This document shows, in pieces, positions 10,432 through 32,608 of a stretch of DNA of 64,000 bases; position 1 is the first letter of the stretch, and each line of letters opens with the position of its first letter. The notes beneath the pieces are model-generated. The model saw only the letters and a list, made by a program, of their open reading frames with translations, made no database searches and was not told the origin of the DNA. The stretch covers positions 62,001 to 126,000 of the IMG/VR virus record IMGVR_UViG_3300028829_003504. The stretch is one strand, 5' to 3'. The position numbers and the translations under genes are program-made.

Positions 10432-11892
10432 ATGGCAAACAAACCTTTAAGTAAAGTAACTGTTAATTTTGAGGAATCTGTAGCCGAGCTTCTGTCAAAG
10501 TTTTCAGATAGCCTACCTTGGGCGAACAAACTAAAGTCTAACGTAGGTACCGTTCTAACAGATATGATTGCAGGTACTGCTACTAATAACCAATTCTATA
10601 TAGAGTTTGCCGCGCGTGAGGCCTTCCTTAAGACAGCAAAGCGGTATAGCTCAGTGTATGCGTTAACACGTAGCCTAGGTGTACGTATAGTAAGACGTAC
10701 TAGTGCAAAGACTACCGTTTCTGTTCAGAACACAAGTACATCCCAAATATTCATTCCAGCCTATGATAGCTTTGAGCTTGAGGGCCGTCCGTTCTACAAT
10801 AGAGAAGGTTTAATGTTTGAGCCTGCTGAGGTAAAACAGTTTGTTTTATTTGAAGGTATCATACAACGCAAAGAACTGAAATTATCGGAACTAGCTACCA
10901 ACTCTTTAGAAATAATAGTAGGGGAGCCTGGTTTTGTTATTAGTGATGACGATGTTAGGGTATTTACCACGGACCCTACAGGAACTATGACTGAATGGAC
11001 TAGACACGATGGCTCCCTTTTTGAACTTAATTCGGAAGATACTAAATTCTTCGATGCCACAACCGGAGACGGCGACGTTTCTTTACTTTTTGGTGATGGT
11101 ACTTTTGGCTCTGTTCCTGGATCAGATAGTACACTTACTATCGTATATGCCATAACTAGTGGGACTGATGGCAACCAAGGCCTATCAGGACTTAAAGTTA
11201 ACTACGCTAAGAACGATTTAATAACAGGTCAAAACATTGAGTCTATATTTGGAGGCACTGGTATTAAAGATAAGGTTTACTATAAAAAGTATGCGCCTTT
11301 CATGTACAATAGTAAGAAACGTATGGTTAGCCCCAGTGACTGGCATGGTAATATAGGCCTATATCCAGGAGTGGGTGATTTAAGTATCCTCAGCCAACGA
11401 GACATTGCACCTAATGACCCATCATGGCAGAACGTGGTTCGCGTATGTATATTGCCCGAAAACGGAAGCTCGTGGGGTGGTCAGAATCCAAGTCCTGAAT
11501 CGGCAGTGTGGACTGAATTCCTCAAGTGGGCTAAGAAACGCGTACGACCTAACACTACTATTCAGCCGTGGAATCCAAGTAAAATTCTTACAGACATAGT
11601 AGTCGAAGTAGCGGTATTCGAGGAGGTAGACACACAGTTGATGAAGGATTTATTAACCACAGTTATCAGCGGAATGTTCACGCATACTCCGGGCACTTTA
11701 GGTAAAGCTTTTACCCGTAGTGACTTAGATGAAGCCATAAAATACGACGATGATCAGCGTAGAGACGGCATAGATTACGTTAAGATAGTCAGTCCTATTG
11801 AAGATATTGAACCTAGTACAAGGCTAGAGTTTGTTAGTCCTAAAAGCATAACCGTTCTGGTACGTTATACAGAACGTGAATCATTCCTATAA
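10432..11892 (+). CDS. baseplate wedge protein (gp6 / baseplate J-like)
   Basis: REAFLKTAKRYSSV, LLFGDGTFGSVP, IVYAITSGTDGN and RMVSPSDW motifs; follows the gp25-like gene. Confidence 0.85.
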   Translation: MANKPLSKVTVNFEESVAELLSKFSDSLPWANKLKSNVGTVLTDMIAGTATNNQFYIEFAAREAFLKTAKRYSSVYALTRSLGVRIVRRTSAKTTVSVQNTSTSQIFIPAYDSFELEGRPFYNREGLMFEPAEVKQFVLFEGIIQRKELKLSELATNSLEIIVGEPGFVISDDDVRVFTTDPTGTMTEWTRHDGSLFELNSEDTKFFDATTGDGDVSLLFGDGTFGSVPGSDSTLTIVYAITSGTDGNQGLSGLKVNYAKNDLITGQNIESIFGGTGIKDKVYYKKYAPFMYNSKKRMVSPSDWHGNIGLYPGVGDLSILSQRDIAPNDPSWQNVVRVCILPENGSSWGGQNPSPESAVWTEFLKWAKKRVRPNTTIQPWNPSKILTDIVVEVAVFEEVDTQLMKDLLTTVISGMFTHTPGTLGKAFTRSDLDEAIKYDDDQRRDGIDYVKIVSPIEDIEPSTRLEFVSPKSITVLVRYTERESFL

Positions 11893-18987: not shown

Positions 18988-21156
18988 ATGATTAATGAAA
19001 TTCGTTTAAGGACGTTTACTTCGCAGGTTGGAGAGGATAATGAAGTTCTCTCCAGAGACCCGAAGCAGAACGCTATAGAATACGAAGGAGATACAGGTCC
19101 CAATACTAGATTAGTTGAGGATGTCGCCTTCAATAAAAAACTAGGTGTACTAACATTCATTAGAAACAACGGTGAAGTCATTGAAGCAAGCGGGTTCTTA
19201 ACAGAGGATCAGATAGGGCACGGCCCTAAAGGTAAGGTAGGTAGAATAGGTAAAGCAGGTCGTGATGGTGAAGAAGGCCGACTAGGTAAAGAAGGACCTG
19301 CTGGATGTGAAGGTGCGCAAGGTAATGCGGGCGATAAAGGGATGTCAGGTAGAGATGGTGAGGATGGTCCTGTAGGTATAGCAGGTACTTCTGGATGTGA
19401 AGGAGATGTAGGCCCTGAGGGTGACGAAGGGGATAAAGGTCCTAAAGGATTCCAAGGATCGATGGGTAAAGACGGGTTAGACTGTATCATAGGCTGTCCT
19501 GGACCTAAAGGGGAACAAGGTTTAGGTACTTTTGTAGTACAAAAGGAAACACCTACTGAGGAGCACGTATACTTATGGGGCGTTCCTTTTGAGAGCGTTT
19601 TACCTGAGTTACCCAAAAAGCCTGATGATATGTCAGCTTCAATCAATTCTATAGTAGTTACTATGACTAAGGATAGAGGTACTACTTATACTGCTTCAGG
19701 CTCTTTAATAGTGAGCGACTTTAAAGGTGGTGTAGGACCTTTCTCTATCATTTGGACAGGTGACTATAAAGCTAAGTTAGGTATAACTAAGGATAGTATA
19801 AGTAACGACAGCCTAAGATTATCACTTGATGCCTCCGCTGAAATAGAACCAGGTGAGGTTGCTGAGATTGCTGGCGATGCCGTTGTTACCATAACGGATA
19901 CGTCAAATGGTAAACAGCTAGTTTTACCTACTACGTATGAATTTAAAGGGAGCAACAGTACGGTAGTTGCTCCTCCCATATACGGTAACGTACGTGATGC
20001 AGCCGTTGTTGAAGGTGATGACTTAAAGTTCTTAGTAACTACTACGAGTCCTTTACTCTCATCAGTACGAATCACATATACGCTAAAGTCAGGAACAGCA
20101 GGAACCTCCGACTACAAGGATTTGGGTCAAGGTTACATGGACTTAAGCATAGGCGTGGACCAGTTCTACGTTAATGTAGAAGCAATACGCGATTCTATAC
20201 CTAACGAAGATGTGGAAACAATGTCGGTTACTGTTAGTATTCCTGGCGTATCTGAATTAAATGCAGGTGATATGACAGCAATAGGTACTATTACTGAGGC
20301 TGATAGCCATATAGTACCTATTGTCCTAGGGCCTGCAGTGGTGACGGAGGGAAGTACTGCAAAAATAACCATCAGGCTAGGTGGTTCTTACATAGAAGGT
20401 GTCACCGGCGGCTACGCAGTTAAGTATAGAACATTATCGGATACAGCGGGTACGTCGGACTACGTAGCTCGGTCTGGGACTCTAACTTTCACCTATAGTT
20501 GGGAAGAGAAAGTCATTGAAATAGCAACAATAGATGATTCTATTGTTGAAGCCACTGAGCAGTTTTATTTTGAGTTGTACGATGCAGGTGCACATCTTGA
20601 CTTAGGTGGAGATACTAAAAAAGTTACGGTTACAGTTAATGACAATGACGAAACTTATAGGGGTTCTACCGGCGGTGGGTGTATAGGATGGGGTGCGAAA
20701 GTTGAAACGCCTGAAGGTACTACATCTATAGAGACTGTATTGATAGGTGATACTATCCTAGGATACGCTGAGCCTAGTATGTCAACAAGTGCTAATTCAA
20801 ACGATCCAGAAGTATTAAACTGGCACGCCCTTGAGTTAAGAGGCAAACGTGCTTGGGTTATGGTTACAAATGCTAGGCATGATACATACCCTCAATACAA
20901 AGTTATCAACGATCTTAACTTAACTTTCGATCATCCTGTCATGACTAAGCGTGATGGCGTATGGCAGTGGCTACCTGCCCTGCAAGTTATAGTTAGTGAT
21001 ATTGTCCTAGGCACTGATAGTCAAGAAGTCCCAGTTACAATAGCTACAGAAGTATACAAAGAACTTAAAGTAGTAGAGCTTGACGTTGAGCCTCACGATG
21101 TCTATTATGTTAACGACATACTAGTCCACAATGTGAATAAAATTGTACATAAGTAA
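18988..21156 (+). CDS. collagen-like fibre protein with two Calx-beta domains and a C-terminal Hint domain
   Basis: About 32 Gly-X-Y triplets; Calx-beta motifs (V.EG...Y.T.SGTAGTSDY; GTLTF...K.I.I.TIDD.IVE..E.F); GGG|C...TFDH...VHN. Confidence 0.85.
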   Translation: MINEIRLRTFTSQVGEDNEVLSRDPKQNAIEYEGDTGPNTRLVEDVAFNKKLGVLTFIRNNGEVIEASGFLTEDQIGHGPKGKVGRIGKAGRDGEEGRLGKEGPAGCEGAQGNAGDKGMSGRDGEDGPVGIAGTSGCEGDVGPEGDEGDKGPKGFQGSMGKDGLDCIIGCPGPKGEQGLGTFVVQKETPTEEHVYLWGVPFESVLPELPKKPDDMSASINSIVVTMTKDRGTTYTASGSLIVSDFKGGVGPFSIIWTGDYKAKLGITKDSISNDSLRLSLDASAEIEPGEVAEIAGDAVVTITDTSNGKQLVLPTTYEFKGSNSTVVAPPIYGNVRDAAVVEGDDLKFLVTTTSPLLSSVRITYTLKSGTAGTSDYKDLGQGYMDLSIGVDQFYVNVEAIRDSIPNEDVETMSVTVSIPGVSELNAGDMTAIGTITEADSHIVPIVLGPAVVTEGSTAKITIRLGGSYIEGVTGGYAVKYRTLSDTAGTSDYVARSGTLTFTYSWEEKVIEIATIDDSIVEATEQFYFELYDAGAHLDLGGDTKKVTVTVNDNDETYRGSTGGGCIGWGAKVETPEGTTSIETVLIGDTILGYAEPSMSTSANSNDPEVLNWHALELRGKRAWVMVTNARHDTYPQYKVINDLNLTFDHPVMTKRDGVWQWLPALQVIVSDIVLGTDSQEVPVTIATEVYKELKVVELDVEPHDVYYVNDILVHNVNKIVHK
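20680..21132 (+). other. Hint (intein-like / BIL-type) autoprocessing domain, about 151 aa
   Basis: Block A CIGWGAKVETPEG, block B LTFDHPV, blocks F/G VVELDVEPHDVYYVNDILVHN. The +1 residue is Val and there is no endonuclease insert. Confidence 0.85.
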
Positions 21157-21166
21157 GGAGAATTAA

Positions 21167-21799
21167 ATGTTAACTAGACCTCCTATGGAATCAGTTAATG
21201 CTAACGGTACTGCCAGTCAGACTGACGTTATAGTTAAAGACGGGAAGTTAGCTGCGGGTAACAAAGAAGATAGTCAAACCGCTGAGGTACAAGATATATT
21301 CTTCGATTCTACTGTCGGTATTCTCGTCATAGAGTTTACTAATGGTGAGACTAAGCGTGTATCTGGGTTCCCTACGTTCGGAACTATACCGGATGGTCCT
21401 GCAGGTCCTACAGGCGACCCTGGTGAAGACGGAAAAGAGGGACGTGACGGACGTGACGGTGAAACAGGAGCACCTGGATGCTTCGGGCCTATTGGACCTA
21501 AAGGAGTAGAGGGTGATCCCGGACGCAATGGCGAAGATGGAGCACCCGGAGCACCTGGACCTAAAGGCTGTCCTGGTCCAGCAGGTAATAAGGGACCTAA
21601 AGGGGAACCTGGAGATGTGGGGGAACCTGGAGTACAAGGACCTCCAGGTGATACAGGTCCTCAAGGCCCTGAGGGTGAGCGTGGTCCAGCAGGTAAAATC
21701 AACTATATCATAAGTACATCAGACCCAGGAACTAGCGCAGGTGCTGGCAGTATATGGATTAATCCTAACATTACAGAAACCAGCCCGGCTTGGCCGTAG
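21167..21799 (+). CDS. collagen-like fibre protein
   Basis: MLTRP N-terminus, about 33 uninterrupted Gly-X-Y triplets and a [13 protein letters not shown] cap. Confidence 0.85.
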
Positions 21800-21807
21800 G
21801 AGTTAGT

Positions 21808-22875
21808 ATGAGTGACGTTAAAACCAATATGCTAGATATCGGACATATTAGCGGTGACTTACGAGTCCAAGATGGAACGCTTAAAATTGTCCCTGATTCT
21901 ATGACGCCTAATGGCAATGTTACAGGATATATTGATAAAACAGGAGTCTTGACTATTGACATACCTGGCCACGGTACTATACAAGCAAACGGATTCCTAA
22001 CGCGTGCTGATATCGGTCAGGGGCATGAAGGCAATAGGGGAAATGAAGGCAGTAATGGAACTGACGGATCGATAGGATTAGATGGCTCCAAAGGTGTTAT
22101 AGGTGATAGGGGAGAAGTAGGTAGTAGAGGCGTACCTGGAGTAAGAGGACCCAGAGGCATGCAAGGCAGTTTTGGCCAAAATGGCAATAGTGGTGCGGAG
22201 GGAGTTAAAGGAGATGACGCCTTTGTTAATATGTTTATACAGGAGTCAGACCCAGGGGCTCCAGGCGCAGGCGCAGTATGGGTTAAACCTATATACACCC
22301 ACCTGCAAGAAGCCATTGCTGATATACAAGCCAATTGTAGTAGTGATGAAGATGAAGATACAGAGGAATTACCAGTCATTGAAGGTGATTCGGAATCACA
22401 TCCTTATACAAGTGATGGACATGCTACAGGTAGCTTAGTCGTTTACTTCGATACAAGTACGTACACCACTTTAGAAGACAGCGGTAAGGAATTCATACGT
22501 GTAGAAGAAGAAGAAAGATTCATACTAATACTTAGACTACTTTCGCCGTTACCTATTGATGCTGTATTCCAAGTGAAACTTAGAGAGGACCCTACTAATA
22601 TTGCATGGGCGGGATTCAAATGGGATTCAGATGACGCTAAGGGTACTGTAGAAAGAACACTTACAATACCAGCAGGTAAGTTAGTCTCTGATGAACTTAC
22701 CGCTTACGTTCCTGAGGATTGGGTAATCGCAAGCGATAGCGGTTATGGCGAACTTGCAATTTCGTCCGATTCAGGTAACAATCAAATAATGATTGACGAA
22801 AGTACGTACCAATTTGTCAGTGATTCCCCCAAATTGAACTATATTAAGATGCGAGTCTATCCTAAGATTTCGTAG
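21808..22875 (+). CDS. collagen-like fibre protein with C-terminal beta-rich domain
   Basis: GF.T...IG collagen lead-in, about 21 triplets and DPGAPGAGAVWVKP. Start placed at the ATG after a GGAG RBS (the track starts at 21790). Confidence 0.8.
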   Translation: MSDVKTNMLDIGHISGDLRVQDGTLKIVPDSMTPNGNVTGYIDKTGVLTIDIPGHGTIQANGFLTRADIGQGHEGNRGNEGSNGTDGSIGLDGSKGVIGDRGEVGSRGVPGVRGPRGMQGSFGQNGNSGAEGVKGDDAFVNMFIQESDPGAPGAGAVWVKPIYTHLQEAIADIQANCSSDEDEDTEELPVIEGDSESHPYTSDGHATGSLVVYFDTSTYTTLEDSGKEFIRVEEEERFILILRLLSPLPIDAVFQVKLREDPTNIAWAGFKWDSDDAKGTVERTLTIPAGKLVSDELTAYVPEDWVIASDSGYGELAISSDSGNNQIMIDESTYQFVSDSPKLNYIKMRVYPKIS

Positions 22876-22902
22876 TATTACATAATTTTCTAAACACGTG
22901 AG

Positions 22903-23400
22903 GTGCTTATGTTAACAAGACCACCACTAAATGCAATTGATGCTGGAGCCGAAAGCGGTGACGTAACTTCAAATGCACTTAATCTACAAGTAGAATCTAT
23001 TGACGATAGTATAGCGACTGAGCTTGGTGCTAAATACGATTCAGTCAATGGCTCTCTAGTTATATCATTCCCAGGATACCCACACCTTAGGATAAACGGC
23101 TTCATGACGCCTATTCATATTAAAGAAGGCAGACAAGGTAAACCTGGGTATGAAGGCAGAGAAGGAATCGAAGGCACTATAGGATCTGACGGAGAGCAAG
23201 GCCAGCAAGGATGTTTAGGCCCAGAGGGTCCTCAGGGACGTCCAGGTCAACGTGGACCTAGAGGTCAGATGGGTTCTCAAGGTGAGATTGGTCCTACGGG
23301 TCCTGATGGGGCTAAAGGAGAGCCTGGAGAATTTCTAGTCTATATACAGAACGACGAACCCGTAGGGGTGGAGCACGGTGCGCTGTGGGTGAAACAATAA
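22903..23400 (+). CDS. collagen-like fibre protein
   Basis: MLTRPP N-terminus, about 22 Gly-X-Y triplets and a GALWVK cap. Confidence 0.85.
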   Translation: MLMLTRPPLNAIDAGAESGDVTSNALNLQVESIDDSIATELGAKYDSVNGSLVISFPGYPHLRINGFMTPIHIKEGRQGKPGYEGREGIEGTIGSDGEQGQQGCLGPEGPQGRPGQRGPRGQMGSQGEIGPTGPDGAKGEPGEFLVYIQNDEPVGVEHGALWVKQ

Positions 23401-23412
23401 TTAGGAACTAAT

Positions 23413-26070
23413 ATGGCACTTAACTTAGAACTATCAAGTTCGAATGAAAAGTCAGTACTATACGATGGTGAGTACGGAGATTTAGACTACATAGAAAGCT
23501 CCTTAACTTTATATTTTAGTGTAGAAGGAACTAGCTCGTATTCTGTTACGATTATCGATGCGGATACAGGAAACGACCAGACGTCTATCGTACAAGTCGG
23601 TCAGGGAACACTAACCATAGACCTTCGTATTCTAAAAAGTTATTTCACAATAGGTACTACCGTATTCGGTGGTACTGTTGTGTTACAGATAGACGATAAT
23701 GATAGTACTGATACTGGTCAGTTTAACATCGACTTCCATTTCGCCGTTACAAATAACGCAGTATACGTGGCTCCAGTGACATTCGGCCTCAGTACAAACG
23801 GTATTGCCATTAGTACTGAGTTACAGCGCAGTAGTGGTATTGATTTCGTTGAGCGCGCCGCGTATCCTACGGTAGAAGTACTTGGAGGCTCAGGTCCTTT
23901 CGAGTACACTTGGGTTCCTGCAAACTTTGAACACTTCTTAATAGAATCAGTAGAAGGTCTTGATACAGACAAACCTACCGTAAACTATAAACTCGATGTT
24001 GCGTCGGACCTACCTGAAGAACTATTTAATTCCGATGGAGGCAAGTGGACTCAGACAGGTATATTTAACGTAAGCGTTCGAGATACCAGTAACGGTGATA
24101 TCTCGTTAGGAGAAGTATCCTGGAGCTTCACTGTTAGTGTACAGGAGGAGGAAAGAGGCGACTCGGTAGTTAAAGAAAGCAGAATCATACCAGGACGATT
24201 TAGAGTACGAAACCCTCTCAATAGCTTCTGGTATGACTTATGTTATTATGAAATGTACGTCTTTGATAAAGATTACCTACAGTGGATTAGACTATTCCCT
24301 AATAAGGTGTTTGTGCGCGATGGAGGCAGCAGTGATTGGATTGAAATAGGTTGCATTACTGATACTTCCTATGACGACCCTTGTGCAGGCTTCGGGTCAG
24401 GTACCGATTGTTCAGGTGAACCTCAAGATCCTCTTGCGGGATCTGGTGATGGATTTGGTTCTAATGGTCCTTCATACGATGTCGATACAGGATATCCTGC
24501 AGGCTTTGATATGCCTGACAGCTCACTCGGTGGCTACGGTATTAAGATTGCACCTAAAGCCACTGGTTACGATACTCCGGTAGGTTACATAATGCAGCGT
24601 CCCGGACTACAGTCGGAAGAATCTTATGATCCTACAGGTCTATCTGCCGATGAAGGCGCTCACGGTAAGTATAATAGTCCTAACTTAAATGGAGCCAGCA
24701 CTTGGGGTAGAGGTGCAGCGGTTACTGAGACTATATATGAATTACCTGCACAGAATGGTTATTACGAACTTCTCTATGCTGCTTACGATTCCGTTAGTAT
24801 CGATGTTTACTACGTAGGTCAGCGAGTAGCTACAACATGTGGACCTGTGCCTAAGTTGACGCGAGGTCTATTGACGTTTAATGTTAACATAGCGACAGGT
24901 CTAGGTGAAAGACGTATCATGATTAGGGTACGTGGTGCCGAGGATGTTAGATGGGCTTACCAAGTAGTAGGTCCTAAAGCTTCACCTGTGCTACAAGATT
25001 TCGATAACCAAGACGATGATGATTACGCAAATATCAATGAGTTTCTTTACGAAGAATCTGAAATGATGCAAACCCAGTACATAGGTACGCCTATGTTTCC
25101 TGCACCCTGTCACGGCACTGTAGGTAATGTAGATCAGACGTTTCCTTGGGCATTATCTGATAGAATTGAGACGCAAAACTGGTTTGAGTACTATCACTAT
25201 GTCGGCGAAAACGGGGGTCCAATGGTGCTCGATTTTAGCTCATGGGCAGCCGCTGACTACGTTGAAATCTGGCAAAATGGGGTTCGGATAGCTACATCTC
25301 AAGATTATAACCAAACTCCAGGCTATGTTGATTTTATATATGAAGCCCGTGAAGGCGTTCAAGATATAATGGTTAGAGTGCATACAGAATCAAAAGGTAT
25401 GGGTCAAGATTTAAGTACTTGGTACTATACACTATTCTGCCCTAACGCAATTGGCCACAGAAGACAACCATGGCCTTGTGGGCCTGACGTTATATACAGC
25501 ATGGGACATCCTGCCACAGAGGATAACTTTGATATAGATAACGGCGTCGAGCGTGGTGCCTTTAAAGTATACATGCGAGAGTGTACGGCTACTACATTAG
25601 TTAGAGTATTCAATAGAGACGGAGACTTGATAACGTCGATGACGGGCGAAGGTGACTTCGATGTAGAGGCTTTCAATTTCGATGTGGTTACAGGAGAAGT
25701 ACATAAGGATATATATGTACGTGTTGAGACTTCTATAGGGCATGGTTGGCAATACACCGTAAGTTGTCCAGTACCTTTACTTGATATAATACTAAAACCT
25801 GTAGACCCAAGTGTAGAGTGGTCTATAACCGATGAAATTATACAGGACGATTCTGAGTATGTCGAACTTATCGTAAGCATAAACAAAGCCCAATTGGTTG
25901 ATAGGTCTATTGATTGGGCTACTAGCAACGACACTGCGTATGACCTAACGGACTACTGTGCTGCTAACGGAACTGTGACAATACCTGCTGGACAGACTAG
26001 TATTAAGATTCAAATTAATTTAGCTCCTTGTGATGCTGAGGATGAGGATGAGGATGCACCTAGCACCTGA
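23413..26070 (+). CDS. acidic virion/fibre protein with repeated beta-sandwich domains and an incomplete C-terminal Calx-beta domain
   Basis: Three units ending W.Y.V/L.(C/G)P. The C-terminus IDWATSNDTA..LTDY....GTVTIPAGQTSIKIQI stops before the last Calx-beta strands. Confidence 0.75.
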   Translation: MALNLELSSSNEKSVLYDGEYGDLDYIESSLTLYFSVEGTSSYSVTIIDADTGNDQTSIVQVGQGTLTIDLRILKSYFTIGTTVFGGTVVLQIDDNDSTDTGQFNIDFHFAVTNNAVYVAPVTFGLSTNGIAISTELQRSSGIDFVERAAYPTVEVLGGSGPFEYTWVPANFEHFLIESVEGLDTDKPTVNYKLDVASDLPEELFNSDGGKWTQTGIFNVSVRDTSNGDISLGEVSWSFTVSVQEEERGDSVVKESRIIPGRFRVRNPLNSFWYDLCYYEMYVFDKDYLQWIRLFPNKVFVRDGGSSDWIEIGCITDTSYDDPCAGFGSGTDCSGEPQDPLAGSGDGFGSNGPSYDVDTGYPAGFDMPDSSLGGYGIKIAPKATGYDTPVGYIMQRPGLQSEESYDPTGLSADEGAHGKYNSPNLNGASTWGRGAAVTETIYELPAQNGYYELLYAAYDSVSIDVYYVGQRVATTCGPVPKLTRGLLTFNVNIATGLGERRIMIRVRGAEDVRWAYQVVGPKASPVLQDFDNQDDDDYANINEFLYEESEMMQTQYIGTPMFPAPCHGTVGNVDQTFPWALSDRIETQNWFEYYHYVGENGGPMVLDFSSWAAADYVEIWQNGVRIATSQDYNQTPGYVDFIYEAREGVQDIMVRVHTESKGMGQDLSTWYYTLFCPNAIGHRRQPWPCGPDVIYSMGHPATEDNFDIDNGVERGAFKVYMRECTATTLVRVFNRDGDLITSMTGEGDFDVEAFNFDVVTGEVHKDIYVRVETSIGHGWQYTVSCPVPLLDIILKPVDPSVEWSITDEIIQDDSEYVELIVSINKAQLVDRSIDWATSNDTAYDLTDYCAANGTVTIPAGQTSIKIQINLAPCDAEDEDEDAPST

Positions 26071-26226
26071 TACTTTCCTAGCTACTATACGTAAAGCTTT
26101 TGAATCTGTAATACCATTTATGTGATTTGATAACCATACAGTCATAAAGTATTAGGGAGTAAGGAGTTAGTAGACCTTGCAGGTAAGTCAGGTAAATGGT
26201 GGCAAGTACTTAATTAAGGAATTATA

Positions 26227-28020
26227 ATGGCAAAACGATTTCATGTTGACTTAGCGAATCCTAGTTTCGGAGTCATAGAAAAAGGTAAAGGAATTGTAAC
26301 GATTCTGGAGGTAGCTGAACCTTTACCTCCAGAGCGGCCTGAACCCGAACTAGTAAATGAATACATCTGGGAATGTATATTTGAAAACTTAGATGGTGAT
26401 GAGGTGAAGTCTGTACCTCATAATAGCGAAGAAGGCTACGAGTATATGATAGCCCATATAGATCTAGAAGGTGATAACGAGATTACTTGGAGCCACGTAG
26501 CTAGATTTATAGGGGACAATCCCACAGGTACACCTATGGCGCAGAATATAGATAGTGGTGTAGGCGTGAGTGACAATTTTGGTATATTTATAGATACGTC
26601 CAACGGTAGTTCTATAATAATTAAAATTATGCGTAGACCTCTACCTGTAGCTGCCGACGAAGACAGCAGAGTAACAGGAAATGAGTTCGTCCGTGTTAGC
26701 GGAAATGACTTAAGCTACCAGTGGGATTTAAACTACGAATACTACATAACCTGTACTTATGGCACACTATCTAACTATACAGGAACTATAATTACCGATG
26801 AAGTATCCTACGGCTATTCGAGCATAGATAAATCAACTGCTTGGATAGCAAACATCGATCAGGATAGGAAGAAGTGGGTAGGGTTTGGACATAAATCATC
26901 AGAGCCTGGTAATAAATCTTATCGTACAGTAGTTACAAAGAGATGTGACTTACACAGCGTATGGCGCAGGCCTTGGTCGGCATCTAGCCTTCCAGCTAGT
27001 GAGTTTGCCAATGAGCATAAACGTGTTAAGAATAACATGGATAGTCCTTCTACTACTTTAACGTTCGACTGGAAAGATAACAAAGAATACCTCGTCATGA
27101 TGGCGGATACTTCTTCTGACAACGAGGTAGCTTGCGCTAAAGTGTATACTACTCCTGGTCTGTTAGAAGTACCAGGCGTAACTAGACATAAATCAGGTAT
27201 TGCTGCACCTGGTGGTAACCCATCATGGATAGAATTCCTACAGACCAGCGTAGGCGGTAGTAAAAAGATAGAGGCGCACCACGGATATATATTAAATATA
27301 CTCGAAAGAGATATGTTCTATGACCCTGGGACGTGCGGCGCTGAAGGTTTCGTAGGTCCTGTTAGCTCTATTTCATCTTTAGCTAGTATTAACACAATAG
27401 GTAAAATCGCGTTTATGTCTGACACCCCAGGTATTACAAAATACGGGGCTTCGGCTACAGACGGTTCAGCTTTGGAAGTTGAGGCTTATATAGGGGACTG
27501 GACAGGCAATGTACCCGATGTATACAATGATAAGTATACTAGCGATATTCAAGGTATAGCGATACCTTATAGTTACGGTGGGGGTATCGCTAGTAACATG
27601 ACGCCTTCCGATCCGTATCTAGCCGAGTCAAAATCTACGGCTTGGAGAGGCTGGTACCTATCCGTCATAGACGAAACTGAACACACTTCTGGTATTAAGT
27701 ACAGTAAGATAACGAGTATCGATATTAACAAGTACGTAGATGGCCACACTTTAGTAATAAGGTGTGAGGACTCTGCTGATGGTGATTATACGCTTGAGAG
27801 TAATTCCTCGATAGTGGACAACAACACAGGACGCTCCGTTAGCCTTAGTGATATCTACGGAATCAGAACTAAAGCATTACACATAGGATTTCAAGATACC
27901 TTAGCAAGAAATCAGTCAGGAATGGATGCTGAGGTTACTATTGCTATTGAATTTGAATTTCATGATGGTACGATGTTTTCACATACATTGACTCTTGCCG
28001 CTAATAGTGAAATATATTAA
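26227..28020 (+). CDS. virion/fibre protein whose N-terminus matches the terminal strands of a Calx-beta domain
   Basis: AAGGA RBS; starts MAKRFHVDLANPSFGVIEKGKGIVTILE, followed by a Pro-rich linker. Confidence 0.75.
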   Translation: MAKRFHVDLANPSFGVIEKGKGIVTILEVAEPLPPERPEPELVNEYIWECIFENLDGDEVKSVPHNSEEGYEYMIAHIDLEGDNEITWSHVARFIGDNPTGTPMAQNIDSGVGVSDNFGIFIDTSNGSSIIIKIMRRPLPVAADEDSRVTGNEFVRVSGNDLSYQWDLNYEYYITCTYGTLSNYTGTIITDEVSYGYSSIDKSTAWIANIDQDRKKWVGFGHKSSEPGNKSYRTVVTKRCDLHSVWRRPWSASSLPASEFANEHKRVKNNMDSPSTTLTFDWKDNKEYLVMMADTSSDNEVACAKVYTTPGLLEVPGVTRHKSGIAAPGGNPSWIEFLQTSVGGSKKIEAHHGYILNILERDMFYDPGTCGAEGFVGPVSSISSLASINTIGKIAFMSDTPGITKYGASATDGSALEVEAYIGDWTGNVPDVYNDKYTSDIQGIAIPYSYGGGIASNMTPSDPYLAESKSTAWRGWYLSVIDETEHTSGIKYSKITSIDINKYVDGHTLVIRCEDSADGDYTLESNSSIVDNNTGRSVSLSDIYGIRTKALHIGFQDTLARNQSGMDAEVTIAIEFEFHDGTMFSHTLTLAANSEIY

Positions 28021-28030
28021 GGAGATTACT

Positions 28031-28585
28031 TTGCCTACTGTTCAAAAACATTGGCTAGTTAACGAATTGGACATTAATACTTATGACGGAAGTTATCAAG
28101 TAGAAGGTGTCCCTTACGTTAAGAACCAAAGCTGTGGCTTTATCATTAAACCTAATTGGGGACTTAGTGTTGACGTAGTTAGCGGTAAGACTATCTTGGG
28201 TCCTAAAAAAGGTAACTTAATGTTAGCTATAATACCGGATAGTACATTACATAAGTCCGAGTGGCTAGAAGGCCAGACGTCAGGTGTTATCGACATAGGG
28301 CGTTTTCATTACGAAGATAGCCAAAGCTACGACTTCACTATTGTATCCAAAAGGGAATCAGGTAAAGGAATAGTCGTACCTCCAGTAGGGACGCATAGCT
28401 TTAAGCAAGATGTATATTCATGGCTTAAATCCCCAGATGCTGCGGTATTTTCTTTCGAAATACATTTGGTAATTGATGACACAACGGATTATATACAAGA
28501 GTTCACTCCGTTATTAGTTAATTTAATAAAAACTCAGAAGTCCAGCAATATAGGCTTCCACGCCGAAGACAAAATAGAGGTATAG
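28031..28585 (+). CDS. hypothetical virion-associated protein
   Basis: TTG start after an AAGGAG RBS (the track begins at 27995, same frame). Confidence 0.65.
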   Translation: MPTVQKHWLVNELDINTYDGSYQVEGVPYVKNQSCGFIIKPNWGLSVDVVSGKTILGPKKGNLMLAIIPDSTLHKSEWLEGQTSGVIDIGRFHYEDSQSYDFTIVSKRESGKGIVVPPVGTHSFKQDVYSWLKSPDAAVFSFEIHLVIDDTTDYIQEFTPLLVNLIKTQKSSNIGFHAEDKIEV

Positions 28586-28587
28586 TA

Positions 28588-30975
28588 ATGGCTACTACCA
28601 ACTTTGCACCTCTGCTTACAGTGGGTGATGAATACGACTTGTCACCTTTTAGTGGCAGAAACATGGTAATACATGCCCAACGCAATAACACAGGATATAC
28701 GTATACATTCAGCATTGACATACTGACTGGTTTTGATCAAGATCGTTACTACGGTCTTATTGTACCTTCGGGACATGGAGAGATACCTCAATCCAATCCT
28801 AATCAGTTGTTTAAAATCACAGCCGATGCTAAGCTTGTACCTCTTAACTATAGTGATGGTCTTGCAGCACAGATTAGCTACCTTACAGGTGATGATGCAG
28901 GAACTCCAGATATCAATGTACATTGGGGATCAGTAGCCCAGCTTACGGTTATCTCAAGTACTGCAAATGAGGGAACTGAGGCGCTACTTAGAATATACAG
29001 GGATGGTGATACTTCGGGTGCGGTTGATATTAATATTGGTTTTATTCCGGGGACCGCGGACTTAGATGATGTACAGTCTATACCTCCATCTGTTACTATG
29101 CAGTCGGGCTTCTCGTTTGTGGATGTACCTATTACTATTAAGACTGACCTTGATTACGAAGGGGACCAGTCATTTTTATTAAGTGCCCAAATAGCAAATG
29201 CGCCTAATGGGGAGGAATGGACAGGTAGTAACTACAGGCAGTTGGTTATTGTAGATACAACTCCTGAATTTCCTGTAGATGTACCCGGTTGTATGGACGT
29301 TACCGCTAACAACTATAACGATGAGGCTACGATCGACAATGGCAGTTGTACCTATGACCCTGTAGTTGTACCAGGCTGTACTGACCCTCTAGCCAACAAC
29401 TATGATCCACTGGCTACTTCGAACAACGGCAGCTGTACATACGACCCAGTGGTGGTATACGGATGTACTGACCCTTCGGCAAGCAACTATAACCCACTAG
29501 CTACAGATAATGACAATTCCTGTGTCTATCCGCCTCCTGTAGTGGACTGTCTAGTCGTAGGAGACTTACTGGAAGTAGAACATTGGTTTAAAGTTTGGTT
29601 TATAGAGCCTGTTGACGGAGAACAGCTACACGACCAAGATTTAATTCAGTATAAGTGGAGCGGTGACTGGGTAACTGACCCTCGTATAGACCTATTCGAT
29701 TACTCGGAGAAAAATCGTGTAGCGATGTTCAAATTCACCAACACTATGTCTTCATCTGATAGTGACGTAGATGTAGACTACGAGGTAACAGCTTGGGCTA
29801 AAGATTTAAGGTTCATTACGTTAGATGTTACTGACGAAGATAGTGCCAATGTAAGCTTCTCTATGCCTTGTGTTATTGCAGGTAATACCCCAAGCTTTAG
29901 CGTAGGCGACATTACAGTTACGGAACCTAGTAGCGGTACCCTAAAAGCATCTGTTTATATAACGGCAAGCGAAGCCGTAACGGGTGGATCTATTACAATC
30001 GATTACTGTTCGAGTGATATAACCGCTACGTCATCTAGTGCCTCTGTAGATGGAGACAGAGATTACGAGCCTGCCTGCGGTACGGTTACTTTTGAAGTAG
30101 GTGAAAGCTCTAAACAAATAGATGTAACTATAAATACTGATAATCTGTACGAACCTTCCGAGACATTAAAGATGACCATATCTAATGTCAGTCGGGGCAG
30201 TATATCAGACTCGGTAGGTACTATAGAGATACAAGAATGGATTGTTCCTACAGTATCAGTTACTCTGGCGTCACAGGGAGCTACGAAAGAATTGTTTGTG
30301 GGTCGCGATACTTCCGGATCGACGGATGCGGTTGAGGTGACAGTAAACGGAAATGTCGAATCAAGACGTTTCTTGATGGAACAGGTCCTCAAGGACTATG
30401 ACATAGCTATATGTGATGAACCCGTTGAGACTGGTCACGGTAATGACGGATGTTCAGACAATTCTAATCCCCTGTCCCACTATAAAGGTGTTGCGGGTGC
30501 TACTAGTAATTTGACTGTCAACTATATAAATAGCATACAACCTCTTCTTGATTCAGGTACTCAGGAGATTAGTATCCTAGTAATGAATGATAGCTCCGAT
30601 GCAATATCCCATGATAACTCTGTATGGGATAACGAGTGGGCTTGGCTAGGAGCTTTAGGTATCCCTGTTACTCTGACCTTCATACGCGTAATAGGGCAGA
30701 CTCATATAGATAACGGTACAGGTAACTATGAATTGGCTCGCATCTGGTTTGAAGAAATCGTTGCTGCTGCACCAGGTAATGTAACGGCTTACTTTAAATC
30801 CTATAGCTCCTACACAACAGGCGCAGCCAGTGACCTAAATGATATACTAAGCAGTACAGTCAATAATGACTATGCGGCAACATGTAACGCCCGACCCGAT
30901 GACGTTATAATAGTAACAGCACCGGACGAAGACTCAGCCTTATCCTTAGCACAGGGAGCCATAACATGTCCTTAG
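28588..30975 (+). CDS. adhesin-like fibre protein: Calx-beta, 3x Cys repeat, Calx-beta, vWA-like domain
   Basis: Two Calx-beta motifs, GC(T/M)D..A.NY...AT..N.SC.Y repeats and the MIDAS-like DTSGS at 30307. Confidence 0.75.
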   Translation: MATTNFAPLLTVGDEYDLSPFSGRNMVIHAQRNNTGYTYTFSIDILTGFDQDRYYGLIVPSGHGEIPQSNPNQLFKITADAKLVPLNYSDGLAAQISYLTGDDAGTPDINVHWGSVAQLTVISSTANEGTEALLRIYRDGDTSGAVDINIGFIPGTADLDDVQSIPPSVTMQSGFSFVDVPITIKTDLDYEGDQSFLLSAQIANAPNGEEWTGSNYRQLVIVDTTPEFPVDVPGCMDVTANNYNDEATIDNGSCTYDPVVVPGCTDPLANNYDPLATSNNGSCTYDPVVVYGCTDPSASNYNPLATDNDNSCVYPPPVVDCLVVGDLLEVEHWFKVWFIEPVDGEQLHDQDLIQYKWSGDWVTDPRIDLFDYSEKNRVAMFKFTNTMSSSDSDVDVDYEVTAWAKDLRFITLDVTDEDSANVSFSMPCVIAGNTPSFSVGDITVTEPSSGTLKASVYITASEAVTGGSITIDYCSSDITATSSSASVDGDRDYEPACGTVTFEVGESSKQIDVTINTDNLYEPSETLKMTISNVSRGSISDSVGTIEIQEWIVPTVSVTLASQGATKELFVGRDTSGSTDAVEVTVNGNVESRRFLMEQVLKDYDIAICDEPVETGHGNDGCSDNSNPLSHYKGVAGATSNLTVNYINSIQPLLDSGTQEISILVMNDSSDAISHDNSVWDNEWAWLGALGIPVTLTFIRVIGQTHIDNGTGNYELARIWFEEIVAAAPGNVTAYFKSYSSYTTGAASDLNDILSSTVNNDYAATCNARPDDVIIVTAPDEDSALSLAQGAITCP
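29287..29529 (+). repeat. three tandem 29-aa (87-nt period) GCTD..A.NY...AT..N.SC.Y repeats
   Basis: Units start at 29287, 29374 and 29461, each with two Cys. Confidence 0.9.
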
Positions 30976-31637
30976 AAGTTCCTGTATTTGTACAGAACGT
31001 ACCCATTAGGCCTTTGCAGCGTAAAGTACAGTGGTACGAGTTTACGCCGTCAAAAGTAAATGGTTTCTTCGACTTCGTACTATCACAAGGGCGTAAGCCT
31101 ATAGGCCGTATCGATATATTCCTAGGAACTAAGTTAATTCAATCGACCAGTCCTACAGATGCACCTGAATTTGATATACAGACCTGGAAGAACTTTAATG
31201 CCAGTAAGTTTGCGATGGAGCCTAGAGGCGCTATTGAGTTTAGTAATATAGATAAATTCTTTATAAATAAAGATGATGTTATTTACGTCAGGATAGAGGC
31301 AGAATTACCGGCAGCCTTTAGATTTTCACTTAATAGATGCCATATCCTGGATTTAAGTGAGTCTATCGGCCTCGTTGTAGATGTATGTAATAGTACTAGA
31401 TTAATTGTCGATCAAGGCCGCCAACCTTGTAATTTCAGAATAGACTTTGGTAAGATACTTAGTACGGATTTTACTCTATCGGAGCATACCAGTAAGATAC
31501 TGTCGGTGCCTATTAGCGCAGACGCTTCGGTTGAGTGGTCTTATGTACCAGGCCGCGATATTAGAATTCGAAGTATAGAACTTTCTACCATAGTACCCTA
31601 TAAAACTAATATTCGAATAGTGAGGAGTAATGGCTAA
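30966..31637 (+). CDS. hypothetical virion-associated protein
   Basis: 223-aa beta-rich ORF with GGAG RBS. Confidence 0.7.
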   Translation: MSLEVPVFVQNVPIRPLQRKVQWYEFTPSKVNGFFDFVLSQGRKPIGRIDIFLGTKLIQSTSPTDAPEFDIQTWKNFNASKFAMEPRGAIEFSNIDKFFINKDDVIYVRIEAELPAAFRFSLNRCHILDLSESIGLVVDVCNSTRLIVDQGRQPCNFRIDFGKILSTDFTLSEHTSKILSVPISADASVEWSYVPGRDIRIRSIELSTIVPYKTNIRIVRSNG

Positions 31638-31845
31638 CTCAATCTTATTAAGAGCTAGGGATTCAGATGGGAGTTGGATTGAAAACTTCCATCTAGGTGC
31701 TTGGTTGATGCGCAATGAAGATAATACCGCTTGGGTACCAATGACAACTGCAAATACTAGAATCGCTAATCCTGATTATGATCCAAATGATTTAGATTCA
31801 ATTATGTGGTTGGTTCCCGGCGACCCAAGACAAACTGGAGATTAG
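31630..31845 (+). CDS. small Trp-repeat virion protein
   Basis: GAGGAG RBS; R.RD...W / MRN..N..W units resemble a segment of 23413..26070. Confidence 0.7.
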   Translation: MANSILLRARDSDGSWIENFHLGAWLMRNEDNTAWVPMTTANTRIANPDYDPNDLDSIMWLVPGDPRQTGD

Positions 31846-31846
31846 T

Positions 31847-32608
31847 ATGTTAACTAAACCGAAGATTAGTATGATAGCTCCAAGTCAGAACTCTGCTGAT
31901 AATGATGTAGTGAAGACGGCTGGAGGTAAGTTAAAGTCGGAGCAGAATGTAGTACCTATAGGGGACGCCGCAGTTAAGAGTGGCCGATATGATACTACGA
32001 CAGGCACTTTGATGATAACGTTAGGTGATGACAGTACTTTAGTCGTGGAGGGTTTTCCTACTGACCAGAGTATAGGAACTGGCCCTAAAGGTGATAGAGG
32101 TGCTGTAGGAAAAGGAGGCCGTCCTGGCAAGAACGGCAAAGATGGATTAGATGGCCCTCAAGGATGTCCAGGGTCTAAAGGAGATAAAGGTGAAATCGGT
32201 CCTACAGGGCCAGAAGGCCCTATGGGTATAACGGGTGAGCAAGGTATTCAAGGTATTCAGGGCCAGCAAGGTGACAGGGGACCTAAAGGAGAACCTGGGC
32301 AAGAACCTATTTACGTATACAGTGAAGCAGGTAGTGAAGAACGAACAGTACAATATGGCCGTGTCATGCTGTGGGGTCACTATCAGTCGGACGGTAGCGT
32401 TAACACTGCTGATGTTAGGTATCCTCAGGCTACAACTAGACTTACACAAACTGTAGTAGCCTTCTTCGCTAATCCTCAATCCGTTCAAGCTCAAAACTAT
32501 GAGATTGAAGCGCAGACGAAAGAAGGGTTTGCTCTACGCGTACCATCATCATTTGCCTTACCCCTTGATGACGATTGGGACTTCCAATGGATAGCACTAG
32601 GAGATTAA
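31847..32608 (+). CDS. collagen-like tail fibre with C-terminal lectin-like tip domain
   Basis: MLTKP N-terminus, about 24 triplets, and GRVMLWGH...V.YP.A...GF.....F.WIALG typical of fibre tips. Confidence 0.8.
   Translation: MLTKPKISMIAPSQNSADNDVVKTAGGKLKSEQNVVPIGDAAVKSGRYDTTTGTLMITLGDDSTLVVEGFPTDQSIGTGPKGDRGAVGKGGRPGKNGKDGLDGPQGCPGSKGDKGEIGPTGPEGPMGITGEQGIQGIQGQQGDRGPKGEPGQEPIYVYSEAGSEERTVQYGRVMLWGHYQSDGSVNTADVRYPQATTRLTQTVVAFFANPQSVQAQNYEIEAQTKEGFALRVPSSFALPLDDDWDFQWIALGD

What the first reader, a model, noticed from the sequence alone, without database searches (positions are those of the whole stretch)
19306..32167. Cysteines at a fixed register (triplets 10 and 20) in four collagen paralogues
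Seen: counting from the first uninterrupted Gly-X-Y, a Gly-Cys-Y triplet falls at position 10 in ORFs 18988 (codon 19306), 21167 (21479), 22903 (23212) and 31847 (32165). It recurs exactly 30 aa later in 18988 (19396) and 21167 (21569). ORF 18988 also has CIIGCP around triplet 30-31, while ORF 21808 lacks the Cys. Cys is rare inside collagen helices. Inference: the cysteines form inter-chain disulfide or three-Cys metal knots that set chain register, or give periodic sites for cross-linking fibres.
Basis: seen in the sequence. Interest (0 to 1): 0.6.

Follow-up and report, generated by a model that had tools for sequence, protein, structure and literature searches.

The report
Register-locked cysteines in phage collagen fibres
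Four collagen-like tail-fibre proteins of a jumbo phage each keep one cysteine exactly ten Gly-X-Y triplets into the helix, a position conserved across this whole phage group, and two of the proteins co-evolve as if they sit together in register, perhaps as the first mixed-chain collagen helix outside animals.

Summary
The window belongs to a 261,788-bp jumbo myophage related to PaBG, NCTB and the Erwinia and Dickeya "hairy" phages.

Five paralogues (A to E) share a ~75-aa N-domain, a collagen helix of fixed length (29+4, 34, 22, 23 and 25 triplets) and a post-helix motif.

- **Triplet 10.** The X-position Cys is the most conserved non-Gly helix position (91% of representatives). It is present in 67 of 67 database relatives. 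No X/Y cysteine occurs anywhere except triplets 10 and 20.
- **Triplet 30 in A.** Cys replaces Gly at triplet 30 in every A orthologue examined.
- **Triplet 20.** Cys-20 is present in both A and B or in neither, in 42 of 42 genomes, with four concordant changes on the tree.
- **A–B charge.** A and B helices have compensating net charge at the same height (independent contrasts r = -0.78). A–D and B–D controls show no such relation.

Best reading: the cysteines are periodic interchain disulfide staples, and A and B assemble in register, possibly as an A·B2 heterotrimer. The chemistry is untested. This is a new variant of a known kind.

The parts
10432..11892 (+). Baseplate wedge protein (T4 gp6-like), at the start of the tail-fibre module
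   Evidence: phrog_219 baseplate wedge subunit, E 1e-60. It has one invariant Cys across 16 orthologues.
11903..16591 (+). Large tail protein (1562 aa)
   Evidence: phrog_14098 tail protein, E 6e-145. No Cys column is shared with the window's copy.
16632..18986 (+). 784-aa conserved protein immediately upstream of A. It was used as a Cys-free anchor to collect syntenic loci.
   Evidence: phrog_21488, E 3e-217. Weak match to the T7 tail-fibre N-domain. 35 loci were found with it. No conserved Cys.
18988..21156 (+). Paralogue A (722 aa): N-domain, collagen helix, post-helix motif, Calx-beta domain, Hint-like C-terminal end
   Evidence: Pfam Collagen and Calx-beta. phrog_38766 and phrog_8745.
19222..19482 (+). 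A helix, 29 uninterrupted Gly-X-Y triplets
   Evidence: The count of 29 is the same in A orthologues of other genomes.
19306..19308 (+). A Cys107, triplet 10 X
   Evidence: Conserved in A except in the Salmondvirus-like clade.
19396..19398 (+). A Cys137, triplet 20 X
   Evidence: Present only where B also has Cys-20, in 42 of 42 genomes.
19483..19485 (+). A Cys166, in the Gly position of triplet 30
   Evidence: Present in every A orthologue examined.
19495..19497 (+). A Cys170, triplet 31 X, seen only in this phage's A
20401..20649 (+). Calx-beta domain of A
   Evidence: Pfam PF03160, E 2e-13.
20665..21153 (+). Hint/intein-like C-terminal domain of A (Cys565 at its start, H-N near its end)
   Evidence: Pfam Hint_2, E 0.077, below the cut-off. 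Pho RadA intein E 1e-3 and gp41-1 intein E 3e-3. The NCTB orthologue is annotated 'contains intein domain'.
21167..21799 (+). Paralogue B (210 aa): N-domain, 34-triplet helix (21395-21700), short C-terminal motif
21431..21457 (+). Triplets 5-7 of B, the conserved G-(K/R)-D/E repeats that precede Cys-10 in the family
   Evidence: Triplet 7 Y is Asp in 89% and triplet 7 X is Arg in 68% of representatives.
21479..21481 (+). B Cys105, triplet 10 X
   Evidence: Present in every B orthologue seen.
21569..21571 (+). B Cys135, triplet 20 X
   Evidence: Co-occurs with A Cys-20.
21790..22875 (+). Paralogue C (start TTG 21790 or ATG 21808): 22-triplet helix (22021-22218) without Cys. Triplet 10 is G-D-R, with the Asp codon at 22051-22053.
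   Evidence: An extra paralogue with G-D-R at triplet 10 also occurs in L079.
22903..23400 (+). Paralogue D: 23-triplet helix (23128-23334). The likely true start is ATG 22909.
   Evidence: The database copy P0001 is 163 aa.
23212..23214 (+). D Cys, triplet 10 X
   Evidence: Present in every D orthologue in the unbiased sample.
31847..32608 (+). Paralogue E (253 aa): 25-triplet helix (32081-32305) and a ~100-aa C-terminal domain
32165..32167 (+). E Cys107, triplet 10 X
   Evidence: Present in every E orthologue seen.

Best explanation
The five genes encode collagen-like baseplate fibres. All are built on one plan:

- a ~75-aa beta-rich N-terminal domain that fixes where the helix starts;
- a triple helix of invariant length;
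- a short post-helix motif.

Selection keeps single cysteines at fixed heights above the N-domain:

- triplet 10 in all four main fibre types;
- triplet 20 in A and B of some lineages;
- triplet 30, in the Gly position, in A.

The most likely mechanism is oxidation to interchain disulfide staples about every 8.6 nm once the virion leaves the reducing cytoplasm. No phage-encoded thiol oxidoreductase was found. The staples would lock register and stiffen helices that lack hydroxyproline.

A and B are not independent fibres. Their helices are equally long, carry compensating charge at equal heights, and gain or lose Cys-20 together. They therefore lie in direct, in-register contact.

The favoured form is a mixed triple helix, about one A chain with two B chains, in which the triplet-20 bridge involves A. 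The alternative form is two homotrimers packed side by side and cross-linked, as in collagen VI tetramers.

**Shown:** the conservation, the register, the A-B co-variation of Cys-20 and of charge.
**Inferred:** disulfide chemistry, heterotrimer stoichiometry, mechanical role.
For: 1. **Exact register and conservation.**. Gly-to-Ala breaks in some A and D helices do not shift the Cys from triplet 10 or 20.
2. **Synonymous codon turnover at the site.**
3. **Cys-20 concordance.** 42 of 42 distinct genomes: 13 have it in both A and B, 29 in neither. There are 4 changes of each trait on the tree. All 3 independent pairs (4 counting weak branches) change together and none changes singly.
4. **Not gene conversion.** X/Y identity between A and B around triplets 18-23 within a genome is 0.15, against 0.167 for permuted genomes (p 0.84).
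5. **Charge complementarity scored on triple-helix contact pairs.** A alone nets about 0 (negative in 14 of 26). B alone nets +21. A·B2 nets +20, z 2.9 against shuffled A triplets. The control mixed combinations A·D2 and D·B2 give z of about 1. A register-shift scan peaks at zero shift.
6. **Within-genome against permuted genomes.** 19.3 against 13.7 +/- 0.67, p <= 2e-4. The result also holds without triplets 1-8. Controls: A-D p 0.43, D-B p 0.10.
7. **Net charge of triplets 1-9.** Spearman -0.77. Independent contrasts r -0.78 (41 contrasts), -0.48 for triplets 11-19 and -0.32 for triplets 21-29. Controls 0.03 and -0.20. Polarity is swapped in L082, L077 and L083.
8. **Stoichiometry hint.** Slope of qB on qA is -0.52 +/- 0.08, and A+2B has the smallest spread.
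9. **Equal length.** The conserved post-helix Pro lies at offset 110 from the helix start in both A and B in most lineages.
10. **Precedents.** One Cys per chain inside the collagen VI helix makes supramolecular disulfides, including one 30 residues into the helix that joins parallel helices (PMC12354898). Same-level Cys-S-S-Cys forms within type I trimers at Gly and Y sites (PMC6039012).
Against: - No chemical evidence exists that any of these thiols is oxidised.
- Phage particles assemble in a reducing cytoplasm, and no thioredoxin, DsbA or glutaredoxin gene was found in five complete genomes. The Erv1 search was uninformative because its control was silent.
- X-position side chains point away from the helix axis, so a same-level disulfide inside one helix is strained (own knowledge).
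- With one Cys per chain, three chains cannot all pair.
- The sign test on Cys-20 is underpowered (p 0.25 with 3 pairs).
- The charge score is a heuristic. The tree for the contrasts was built from B+D themselves with a quick search.
- B alone scores as well as A·B2, so B homotrimers are not disfavoured.
- The Salmondvirus-like clade lost Cys-10 in A but not in B, so triplet 10 does not behave like triplet 20.
Confidence: 0.45

Rival explanations
1. Every fibre is an independent homotrimer, and the cysteines only staple chains within that trimer: one disulfide plus one spare thiol per level. A and B do not touch. Their shared Cys-20 state and opposite charges reflect parallel selection, for example on overall fibre stability or on the net charge of the baseplate periphery.
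For: - Homotrimers are the rule for phage fibres and prokaryotic collagen-like proteins (PMC8968730).
- Same-level disulfides within one trimer are known to form (PMC6039012).
- Loss of Cys-10 in A alone, and in C alone, is tolerated.
- B alone has a strongly favourable charge-pair score.
Against: - It does not explain 42 of 42 concordance of Cys-20 with four joint changes.
- It does not explain the segment-by-segment charge compensation specific to A-B, which is absent for A-D and B-D.
- It does not explain why A alone is electrostatically neutral to repulsive.
Confidence: 0.18
2. All fibres are homotrimers, but they are bundled side by side and in register because their homologous N-domains dock at one height. 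The odd third thiol of each trimer bridges to a neighbouring trimer, as in collagen VI tetramers, C1q or adiponectin hexamers. A3 and B3 are neighbours held by opposite charge and by the triplet-20 bridge.
For: - The Cys sits at the same height in four fibre types.
- One Cys per chain leaves an unpaired thiol in any homotrimer.
- The A-B co-variation fits lateral contact as well as a mixed helix.
- The 30-residue spacing equals one turn of a 10/3 triple helix, so Cys-10 and Cys-20 of one chain would face the same side (own knowledge).
- Collagen VI is a precedent.
Against: - A homotrimers would carry up to +27 net charge over nine triplets and score about 0 or negative on internal charge pairs.
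- The charge slope is near -0.5 rather than the -1 expected for a 3:3 pairing.
- Complementarity was detected with a within-helix contact scheme and peaks at exact register. That is a sharper dependence than loose lateral packing predicts.
Confidence: 0.22
3. The thiols stay reduced and serve a non-redox role. Together with the conserved G-R-D-G-R-D triplets just before it, Cys-10 would be part of a recognition site for a shared baseplate socket, an assembly chaperone or a metal ion. For Cys-30 of A, it could be a core metal site.
For: - Triplets 5-10 form the only conserved block in the helix. That looks like a binding site common to all fibres.
- Assembly takes place in a reducing cytoplasm without phage redox enzymes.
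- Cys-30 of A occupies the axis-facing Gly position.
Against: - No candidate partner with a matching conserved feature was found. The two nearest structural proteins have no conserved Cys, and the wedge has one.
- A pure recognition role does not predict joint loss of Cys-20 in A and B.
- Cys is an unusual choice for a non-covalent contact and is otherwise excluded from these helices.
Confidence: 0.12
4. The pattern is inherited from the common ancestor of the paralogues and has no function of its own.
For: The paralogues are clearly homologous along their whole length.
Against: - The X/Y positions around it have diverged to 9-23% identity, while Cys-10 stays at 91-100%.
- Both Cys codons are used at the site.
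- Cys is absent from every other X/Y position.
Confidence: 0.02

Closest known systems
Collagen-like phage tail fibre and minor tail proteins (Pfam PF01391 in PHROG tail-fibre families; the prophage collagen-like proteins of E. coli O157, PMC3368898)
   Same: Gly-X-Y helix flanked by non-collagen domains, encoded in the baseplate and fibre module, and lacking hydroxyproline.
   Different: The generic members sampled here almost never carry Cys in the helix (2 of about 55). This family has a fixed-register Cys, invariant helix lengths, and four to five paralogues per genome.
Collagen VI: a single cysteine inside each chain's triple-helical domain
   Same: One Cys per chain embedded in the helix at a conserved distance from its end. 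In alpha3 it lies 30 residues into the helix, where two parallel helices are joined (PMC12354898). Here Cys-10 is the 29th residue of the helix.
   Different: Collagen VI is an animal extracellular heterotrimer oxidised in the ER. There is no sequence relation, and disulfides are not shown here.
Cystine knots at collagen helix ends (type III G-P-C-C-G; the FACIT two-Cys junction)
   Same: Cysteines used to tie the three chains of a helix. Window A has two Cys four residues apart at triplets 30-31.
   Different: Knots need two Cys per chain at the helix end. Triplets 10 and 20 have one Cys in mid-helix. The second Cys of window A is not conserved.
C1q and adiponectin: collagen-stalk proteins joined by an odd cysteine
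   Same: A single Cys per chain leaves one thiol free to link two trimers. C1q is also a heterotrimer of paralogous chains of equal length (own knowledge).
   Different: Their Cys lies in the N-terminal non-collagen segment, not inside the helix. They are animal proteins.
Designed charge-paired collagen heterotrimers (acidic plus basic chains)
   Same: An acidic and a basic chain of equal length, complementary through Y-to-X' charge pairs. The same scoring logic detects the A-B signal.
   Different: These are synthetic peptides. A natural viral or prokaryotic example is not described in the literature searched.

Membership tests
Collagen triple-helix repeat (PF01391) | Long uninterrupted Gly-X-Y repeats | tested here: met
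   22-34 perfect triplets in A-E. Pfam Collagen E 4e-8 to 1e-17, above the cut-off.
Collagen triple-helix repeat (PF01391) | Three chains wound into a triple helix | not testable with these tools
   The only complex job was not folded by the tool. It needs CD, native mass spectrometry or a structure.
Phage baseplate-attached tail fibre | Encoded in the baseplate and fibre module and related to known tail-fibre families | tested here: met
   The genes follow the gp6-like wedge and tail proteins. There are hits to phrog_8745, 5073, 6320 and 366. Synteny holds in PaBG, NCTB and the Erwinia and Dickeya phages.
Phage baseplate-attached tail fibre | Present in the virion at the baseplate | not tested
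   Relatives are annotated 'virion structural protein' or 'tail fiber protein', which is annotation only. Day et al. name them as candidates for the 'hairs' (PMC6143709).
Collagen cystine knot (type III or FACIT type) | Two closely spaced Cys per chain at the end of the helix | tested here: not met
   Triplets 10 and 20 carry a single mid-helix Cys. Only window A has a second Cys at triplet 31, and it is not conserved.
Helix-embedded cross-linking cysteine (collagen VI type, functional class) | A single conserved Cys per chain inside the helix at a fixed distance from its end | tested here: met
Helix-embedded cross-linking cysteine (collagen VI type, functional class) | The Cys is disulfide-bonded to another chain or molecule | not testable with these tools
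   Needs non-reducing gels or disulfide mapping.
Heterotrimeric collagen | Distinct chains with helices of matching length and register | tested here: met
   A has 29+1+3 triplets and B has 34. The conserved Pro is at offset 110 in both in most lineages.
Heterotrimeric collagen | Chain-specific complementarity that co-evolves | tested here: met
   The A-D and B-D controls are negative.
Heterotrimeric collagen | Different chains physically present in one triple helix | not testable with these tools
An experiment is needed.
Intein / Hint domain (C-terminal end of A) | N-terminal Cys nucleophile, T-x-x-H block, terminal H-N, and a following Cys/Ser/Thr | tested here: inconclusive
   Cys565, T-F-D-H and H-N are present. 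The residue after H-N is Val. Pfam Hint_2 scores 13.8 bits against a cut-off of 28.4. There are weak intein matches in the PDB.

The most novel reading that the evidence does not exclude
A and B form a natural heterotrimeric collagen-like helix (about A·B2) in a bacteriophage. Chain selection would be coded by opposite charge along the helix, and the chains would be locked by disulfide staples spaced exactly ten triplets apart. This would be the first mixed-chain collagen helix outside animals, and the first in which the helix itself, rather than a non-collagen domain, carries the selection code.
Probability: 0.35. Interest if true: 0.8.

Novelty: new variant of a known kind. Interest (0 to 1): 0.66.

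Why it matters
Collagen-like phage fibres are common but poorly understood. Prokaryotic and viral collagens are treated as plain homotrimers without cross-links.

- A family-wide cysteine at a fixed height would be a natural solution to stabilising and registering hydroxyproline-free helices. That is of direct interest for recombinant collagen materials.
- The A-B co-variation gives a concrete, testable case of two phage fibre proteins that must meet in register. It may show how nature encodes heterotrimer selection inside a triple helix.
- It also points to which proteins may build the unexplained 'hairs' and fibre network of this jumbo-phage group.

Tried and rejected
- **Near-identity DNA search in the phage collection.** No match. 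A protein-level search found the relatives.
- **First locus scan with the D alignment.** The scan pattern contained the Cys itself, so it is biased. Its loci were not used for statistics on D and served only to look at outliers. That look showed that L034-L042 are unrelated collagen-like proteins.
- **N-domain.** The model has pLDDT 79 and five strands. Foldseek against the PDB gave nothing at E <= 0.001, and a profile search of PDB sequences gave nothing credible. The fold remains unassigned.
- **Common non-collagen disulfide partner.** The 784-aa and 1562-aa neighbours have no conserved Cys, and the wedge has one. This idea is weakly supported at best.
- **Phage-encoded thiol oxidoreductases.** Thioredoxin, DsbA and glutaredoxin were absent from five complete genomes. 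The Erv1/ALR search was uninformative because the control was silent.
- **Gene conversion as the cause of the A-B Cys-20 concordance.** Rejected.
- **Complex prediction of A(1-200) with two B chains.** The tool did not fold it because of a likeness filter on chain 1.
- **Charge relation involving E.** No signal was seen in a smaller, clade-biased sample. In that subset A-D was -0.47 (p 0.08), driven by the Salmondvirus-like clade, and this was not pursued.
- **Other tools and codes.** No reads tools were used. No alternative genetic code was needed.

Full report
**What the window is.** The window is part of an IMG/VR virus record. It is base-for-base identical over the A-D region to a 261,788-bp contig with direct terminal repeats, rated 100% complete. 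There is no near-identical DNA in the phage collection. At protein level the relatives are jumbo myophages: NCTB, Pseudomonas phage PaBG, and the Erwinia and Dickeya genera Alexandravirus, Salmondvirus and Rivsvirus. Day et al. call this group the 'hairy Myoviridae' and say the proteins of the hairs are unknown, with the tail-fibre proteins as candidates (PMC6143709). The region is a baseplate and fibre module. It contains a gp6-like wedge, a 1562-aa tail protein, a conserved 784-aa protein, then the collagen-like genes interleaved with large fibre proteins. Gene order is the same in eight annotated relatives.

| Paralogue | Triplets | Cys positions |
|---|---|---|
| A | 29 | triplet 10 X (nt 19306), triplet 20 X (19396), then C-I-I-G-C |
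| B | 34 | triplet 10 (21479), triplet 20 (21569) |
| C | 22 | none (triplet 10 is G-D-R) |
| D | 23 | triplet 10 (23212) |
| E | 25 | triplet 10 (32165) |

The count starts at the same place in all five because they share a homologous ~75-aa N-terminal domain ending in G-(F/L)-x-T-x-x-x-I-G. All five also share a post-helix motif: a hydrophobic strand, then (D/Q)-P, then G-x-hydrophobic-W. The paralogues are therefore one module with different helix lengths and tips.

**Is it more than chance or ancestry?** To avoid ascertainment bias I collected loci with the Cys-free 784-aa neighbour as anchor, which gave 35 IMG/VR loci. I added 11 more lineages found through B-type proteins.

- Helix lengths are invariant: A has 29 triplets plus C-I-x plus 3 more, B has 34, D has 23 and E has 24 or 25.
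- Cys at triplet 10 X is present in every B, D and E. It is present in every A except the Salmondvirus-like clade.
- Where a helix has a Gly-to-Ala break before the site, the Cys still falls at triplet 10 counted from the N-domain.
- Among 47 representatives at <=80% identity, triplet-10 X is the most conserved non-Gly position (91%, 0.49 bits). Next come Asp at triplet 7 Y (89%) and Arg at triplet 7 X (68%). X/Y identity between paralogue classes is only 9-23%.
- All 121 Cys among 6156 X/Y positions lie at triplet 10 or 20.
- Both Cys codons occur at the site in every class.
- In a profile search of the large protein set, 67 of 67 listed proteins with the N-domain have Cys-10. Generic collagen-like hits without the N-domain almost never have Cys. 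Word-based candidate retrieval may add a small bias to this count.

**New features of the Cys pattern.**

- In A, the residue after the 29th triplet is Cys in every orthologue. Cys thus occupies the Gly position of triplet 30, one residue short of a third 30-residue step. The second Cys of the window's C-I-I-G-C is seen only in this phage's A.
- Cys-20 occurs in A and B together or in neither, in 42 of 42 distinct genomes: 13 with both and 29 with neither.
- On a B+D tree each trait changes four times. All three independent pairs on supported branches (four counting weak ones) change together and none changes singly. The sign test cannot reach significance with so few pairs (p 0.25). The same pattern appears on the anchor-protein tree.
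- The sequences flanking Cys-20 in A and B are no more alike within a genome than between genomes. Gene conversion therefore does not explain the concordance.
- C has Asp at triplet 10 both here and in the extra paralogue of the related contig L079.

**A and B co-evolve.** I scored interchain charge pairs using the standard one-residue stagger: Y of one chain against X of the next chain, in the same and the following triplet.

- A alone nets about zero. It is negative in 14 of 26 lineages and no better than its own shuffled triplets. B alone nets +21.
- Mixed A·B2 helices net +20, which is z = 2.9 above shuffled A.
- The A-D and D-B controls give z of about 1.
- Sliding A against B gives a maximum at zero shift, while D against B shows none.
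- Across 20 lineages, real genome pairs score 19.3 against 13.7 +/- 0.67 for permuted pairs (p <= 2e-4). This also holds without triplets 1-8. The controls are not significant.
- The net charge of triplets 1-9 is opposite in A and B (Spearman -0.77, n = 22). Polarity is reversed in L082, L077 and L083.
- Phylogenetically independent contrasts give r = -0.78 for triplets 1-9, -0.48 for 11-19 and -0.32 for 21-29. The A-D and B-D controls give 0.03 and -0.20.
- The slope of B charge on A charge is -0.52 +/- 0.08, and A+2B has the smallest spread. This hints at one A per two B, though regression dilution prevents a firm claim.
- The conserved post-helix Pro lies at offset 110 in both proteins in most lineages.

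Caveats: the score is a heuristic, the tree is a quick one built from B and D, and charges are discrete.

**Mechanism.** The sequences show selection for thiols at fixed heights and direct in-register coupling of A and B. I infer that the thiols form interchain disulfides after release from the cell.

- No thioredoxin, DsbA or glutaredoxin gene is present in five complete genomes. The Erv1 search was uninformative.
- Same-level disulfides within a trimer are known from type I collagen variants at Gly and Y positions. At a Gly site the bond even helps refolding past the break (PMC6039012). That fits Cys-30 of A.
- Helix-embedded single cysteines that link helices are known from collagen VI, including one 30 residues into the helix (PMC12354898).
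- A spacing of 30 residues is one full turn of a 10/3 triple helix (own knowledge). Successive cysteines of one chain would then face the same side.
- For triplets 10 and 20 a metal knot is unlikely, because X side chains point outward (own knowledge).

I favour a mixed A/B helix over side-by-side homotrimers for four reasons. A alone is electrostatically poor. The complementarity follows within-helix contacts at exact register. The slope is near -0.5. Only A tolerates Gly breaks. The side-by-side model is not excluded. [quoted passage not shown] The mixed helix would therefore be new.

**What could not be done.** The N-domain model found no structural relative. No experiment on thiol state exists in the papers searched.

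**Verdict.** This is a new variant of a known kind, with a credible and testable route to a more novel result.

Noticed in passing
window 20665-21153 (+), C-terminal 163 aa of A: A Hint/intein-like domain at the very end of a tail-fibre protein. It has Cys565 at its start, a T-x-x-H block, and H-N seven residues before the stop, but Val rather than Cys/Ser/Thr follows. This suggests self-cleavage of the C-terminal end rather than splicing. Most orthologues of A lack it. NCTB is annotated with intein domains at the same place.
   Followed up: partly
window about 29280-29540 (+), inside ORF 28588-30975: Three tandem ~27-aa repeats, each bracketed by two Cys (G-C-x-D ... N-x-S-C-x-Y), with no Pfam match. 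They look like small disulfide loops in a distal fibre protein. That would mean this phage does use extracellular disulfides.
   Followed up: partly
L066:18003-18956 (+): The B orthologue of this contig carries a C-terminal extension with 11 extra cysteines (C-C, C-x-C-C and similar). It lacks Cys-20.
   Followed up: no
window 21790-22875 (+); L079:6640-7503: An extra paralogue C sits between B and D. It is found only here and in the nearest relative L079. Both have Asp in place of Cys at triplet 10. The L079 copy also has two non-Gly triplets (7-8).
   Followed up: partly
window 22903-22911: D more likely starts at ATG 22909 (M-L-T-R-P-P, as in B and E, and as in the 163-aa database copy) than at GTG 22903.
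   Followed up: yes
A helices in L066, L069 and L078-L083: Gly-to-Ala or Gly-to-Gln breaks at triplets 5, 6, 7 or 16 recur in A-type helices of several lineages. They never occur in B. One D (L017) has such a break at triplet 7.
   Followed up: partly
L049, L051, L053 (Salmondvirus-like clade): In this clade A has lost Cys-10 and is short (324 aa). Its triplets 1-9 are strongly basic (+5 to +6), B is neutral and D is unusually acidic (-4 to -5). This raises the possibility of a different partner in this clade.
   Followed up: no
window 10432-11892 (+): The gp6-like wedge protein has a single Cys that is invariant in 16 orthologues (about residue 340 of the ORF). It is the only conserved Cys among the three proteins upstream of the fibres.
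   Followed up: no
P0077, P0102, P0117 (database proteins): These proteins have a T7 tail-fibre N-domain followed by the same Y-D-x-x-T-G-x-L-T hairpin motif and a long collagen helix without any Cys. The pre-helix hairpin is therefore wider spread than the Cys register.
   Followed up: no
L077:6781-7632; PaBG and AD1 loci (L002, L003): HNH endonuclease genes lie inside or next to the fibre gene cluster in several relatives. In L077 one sits between B and D.
   Followed up: no
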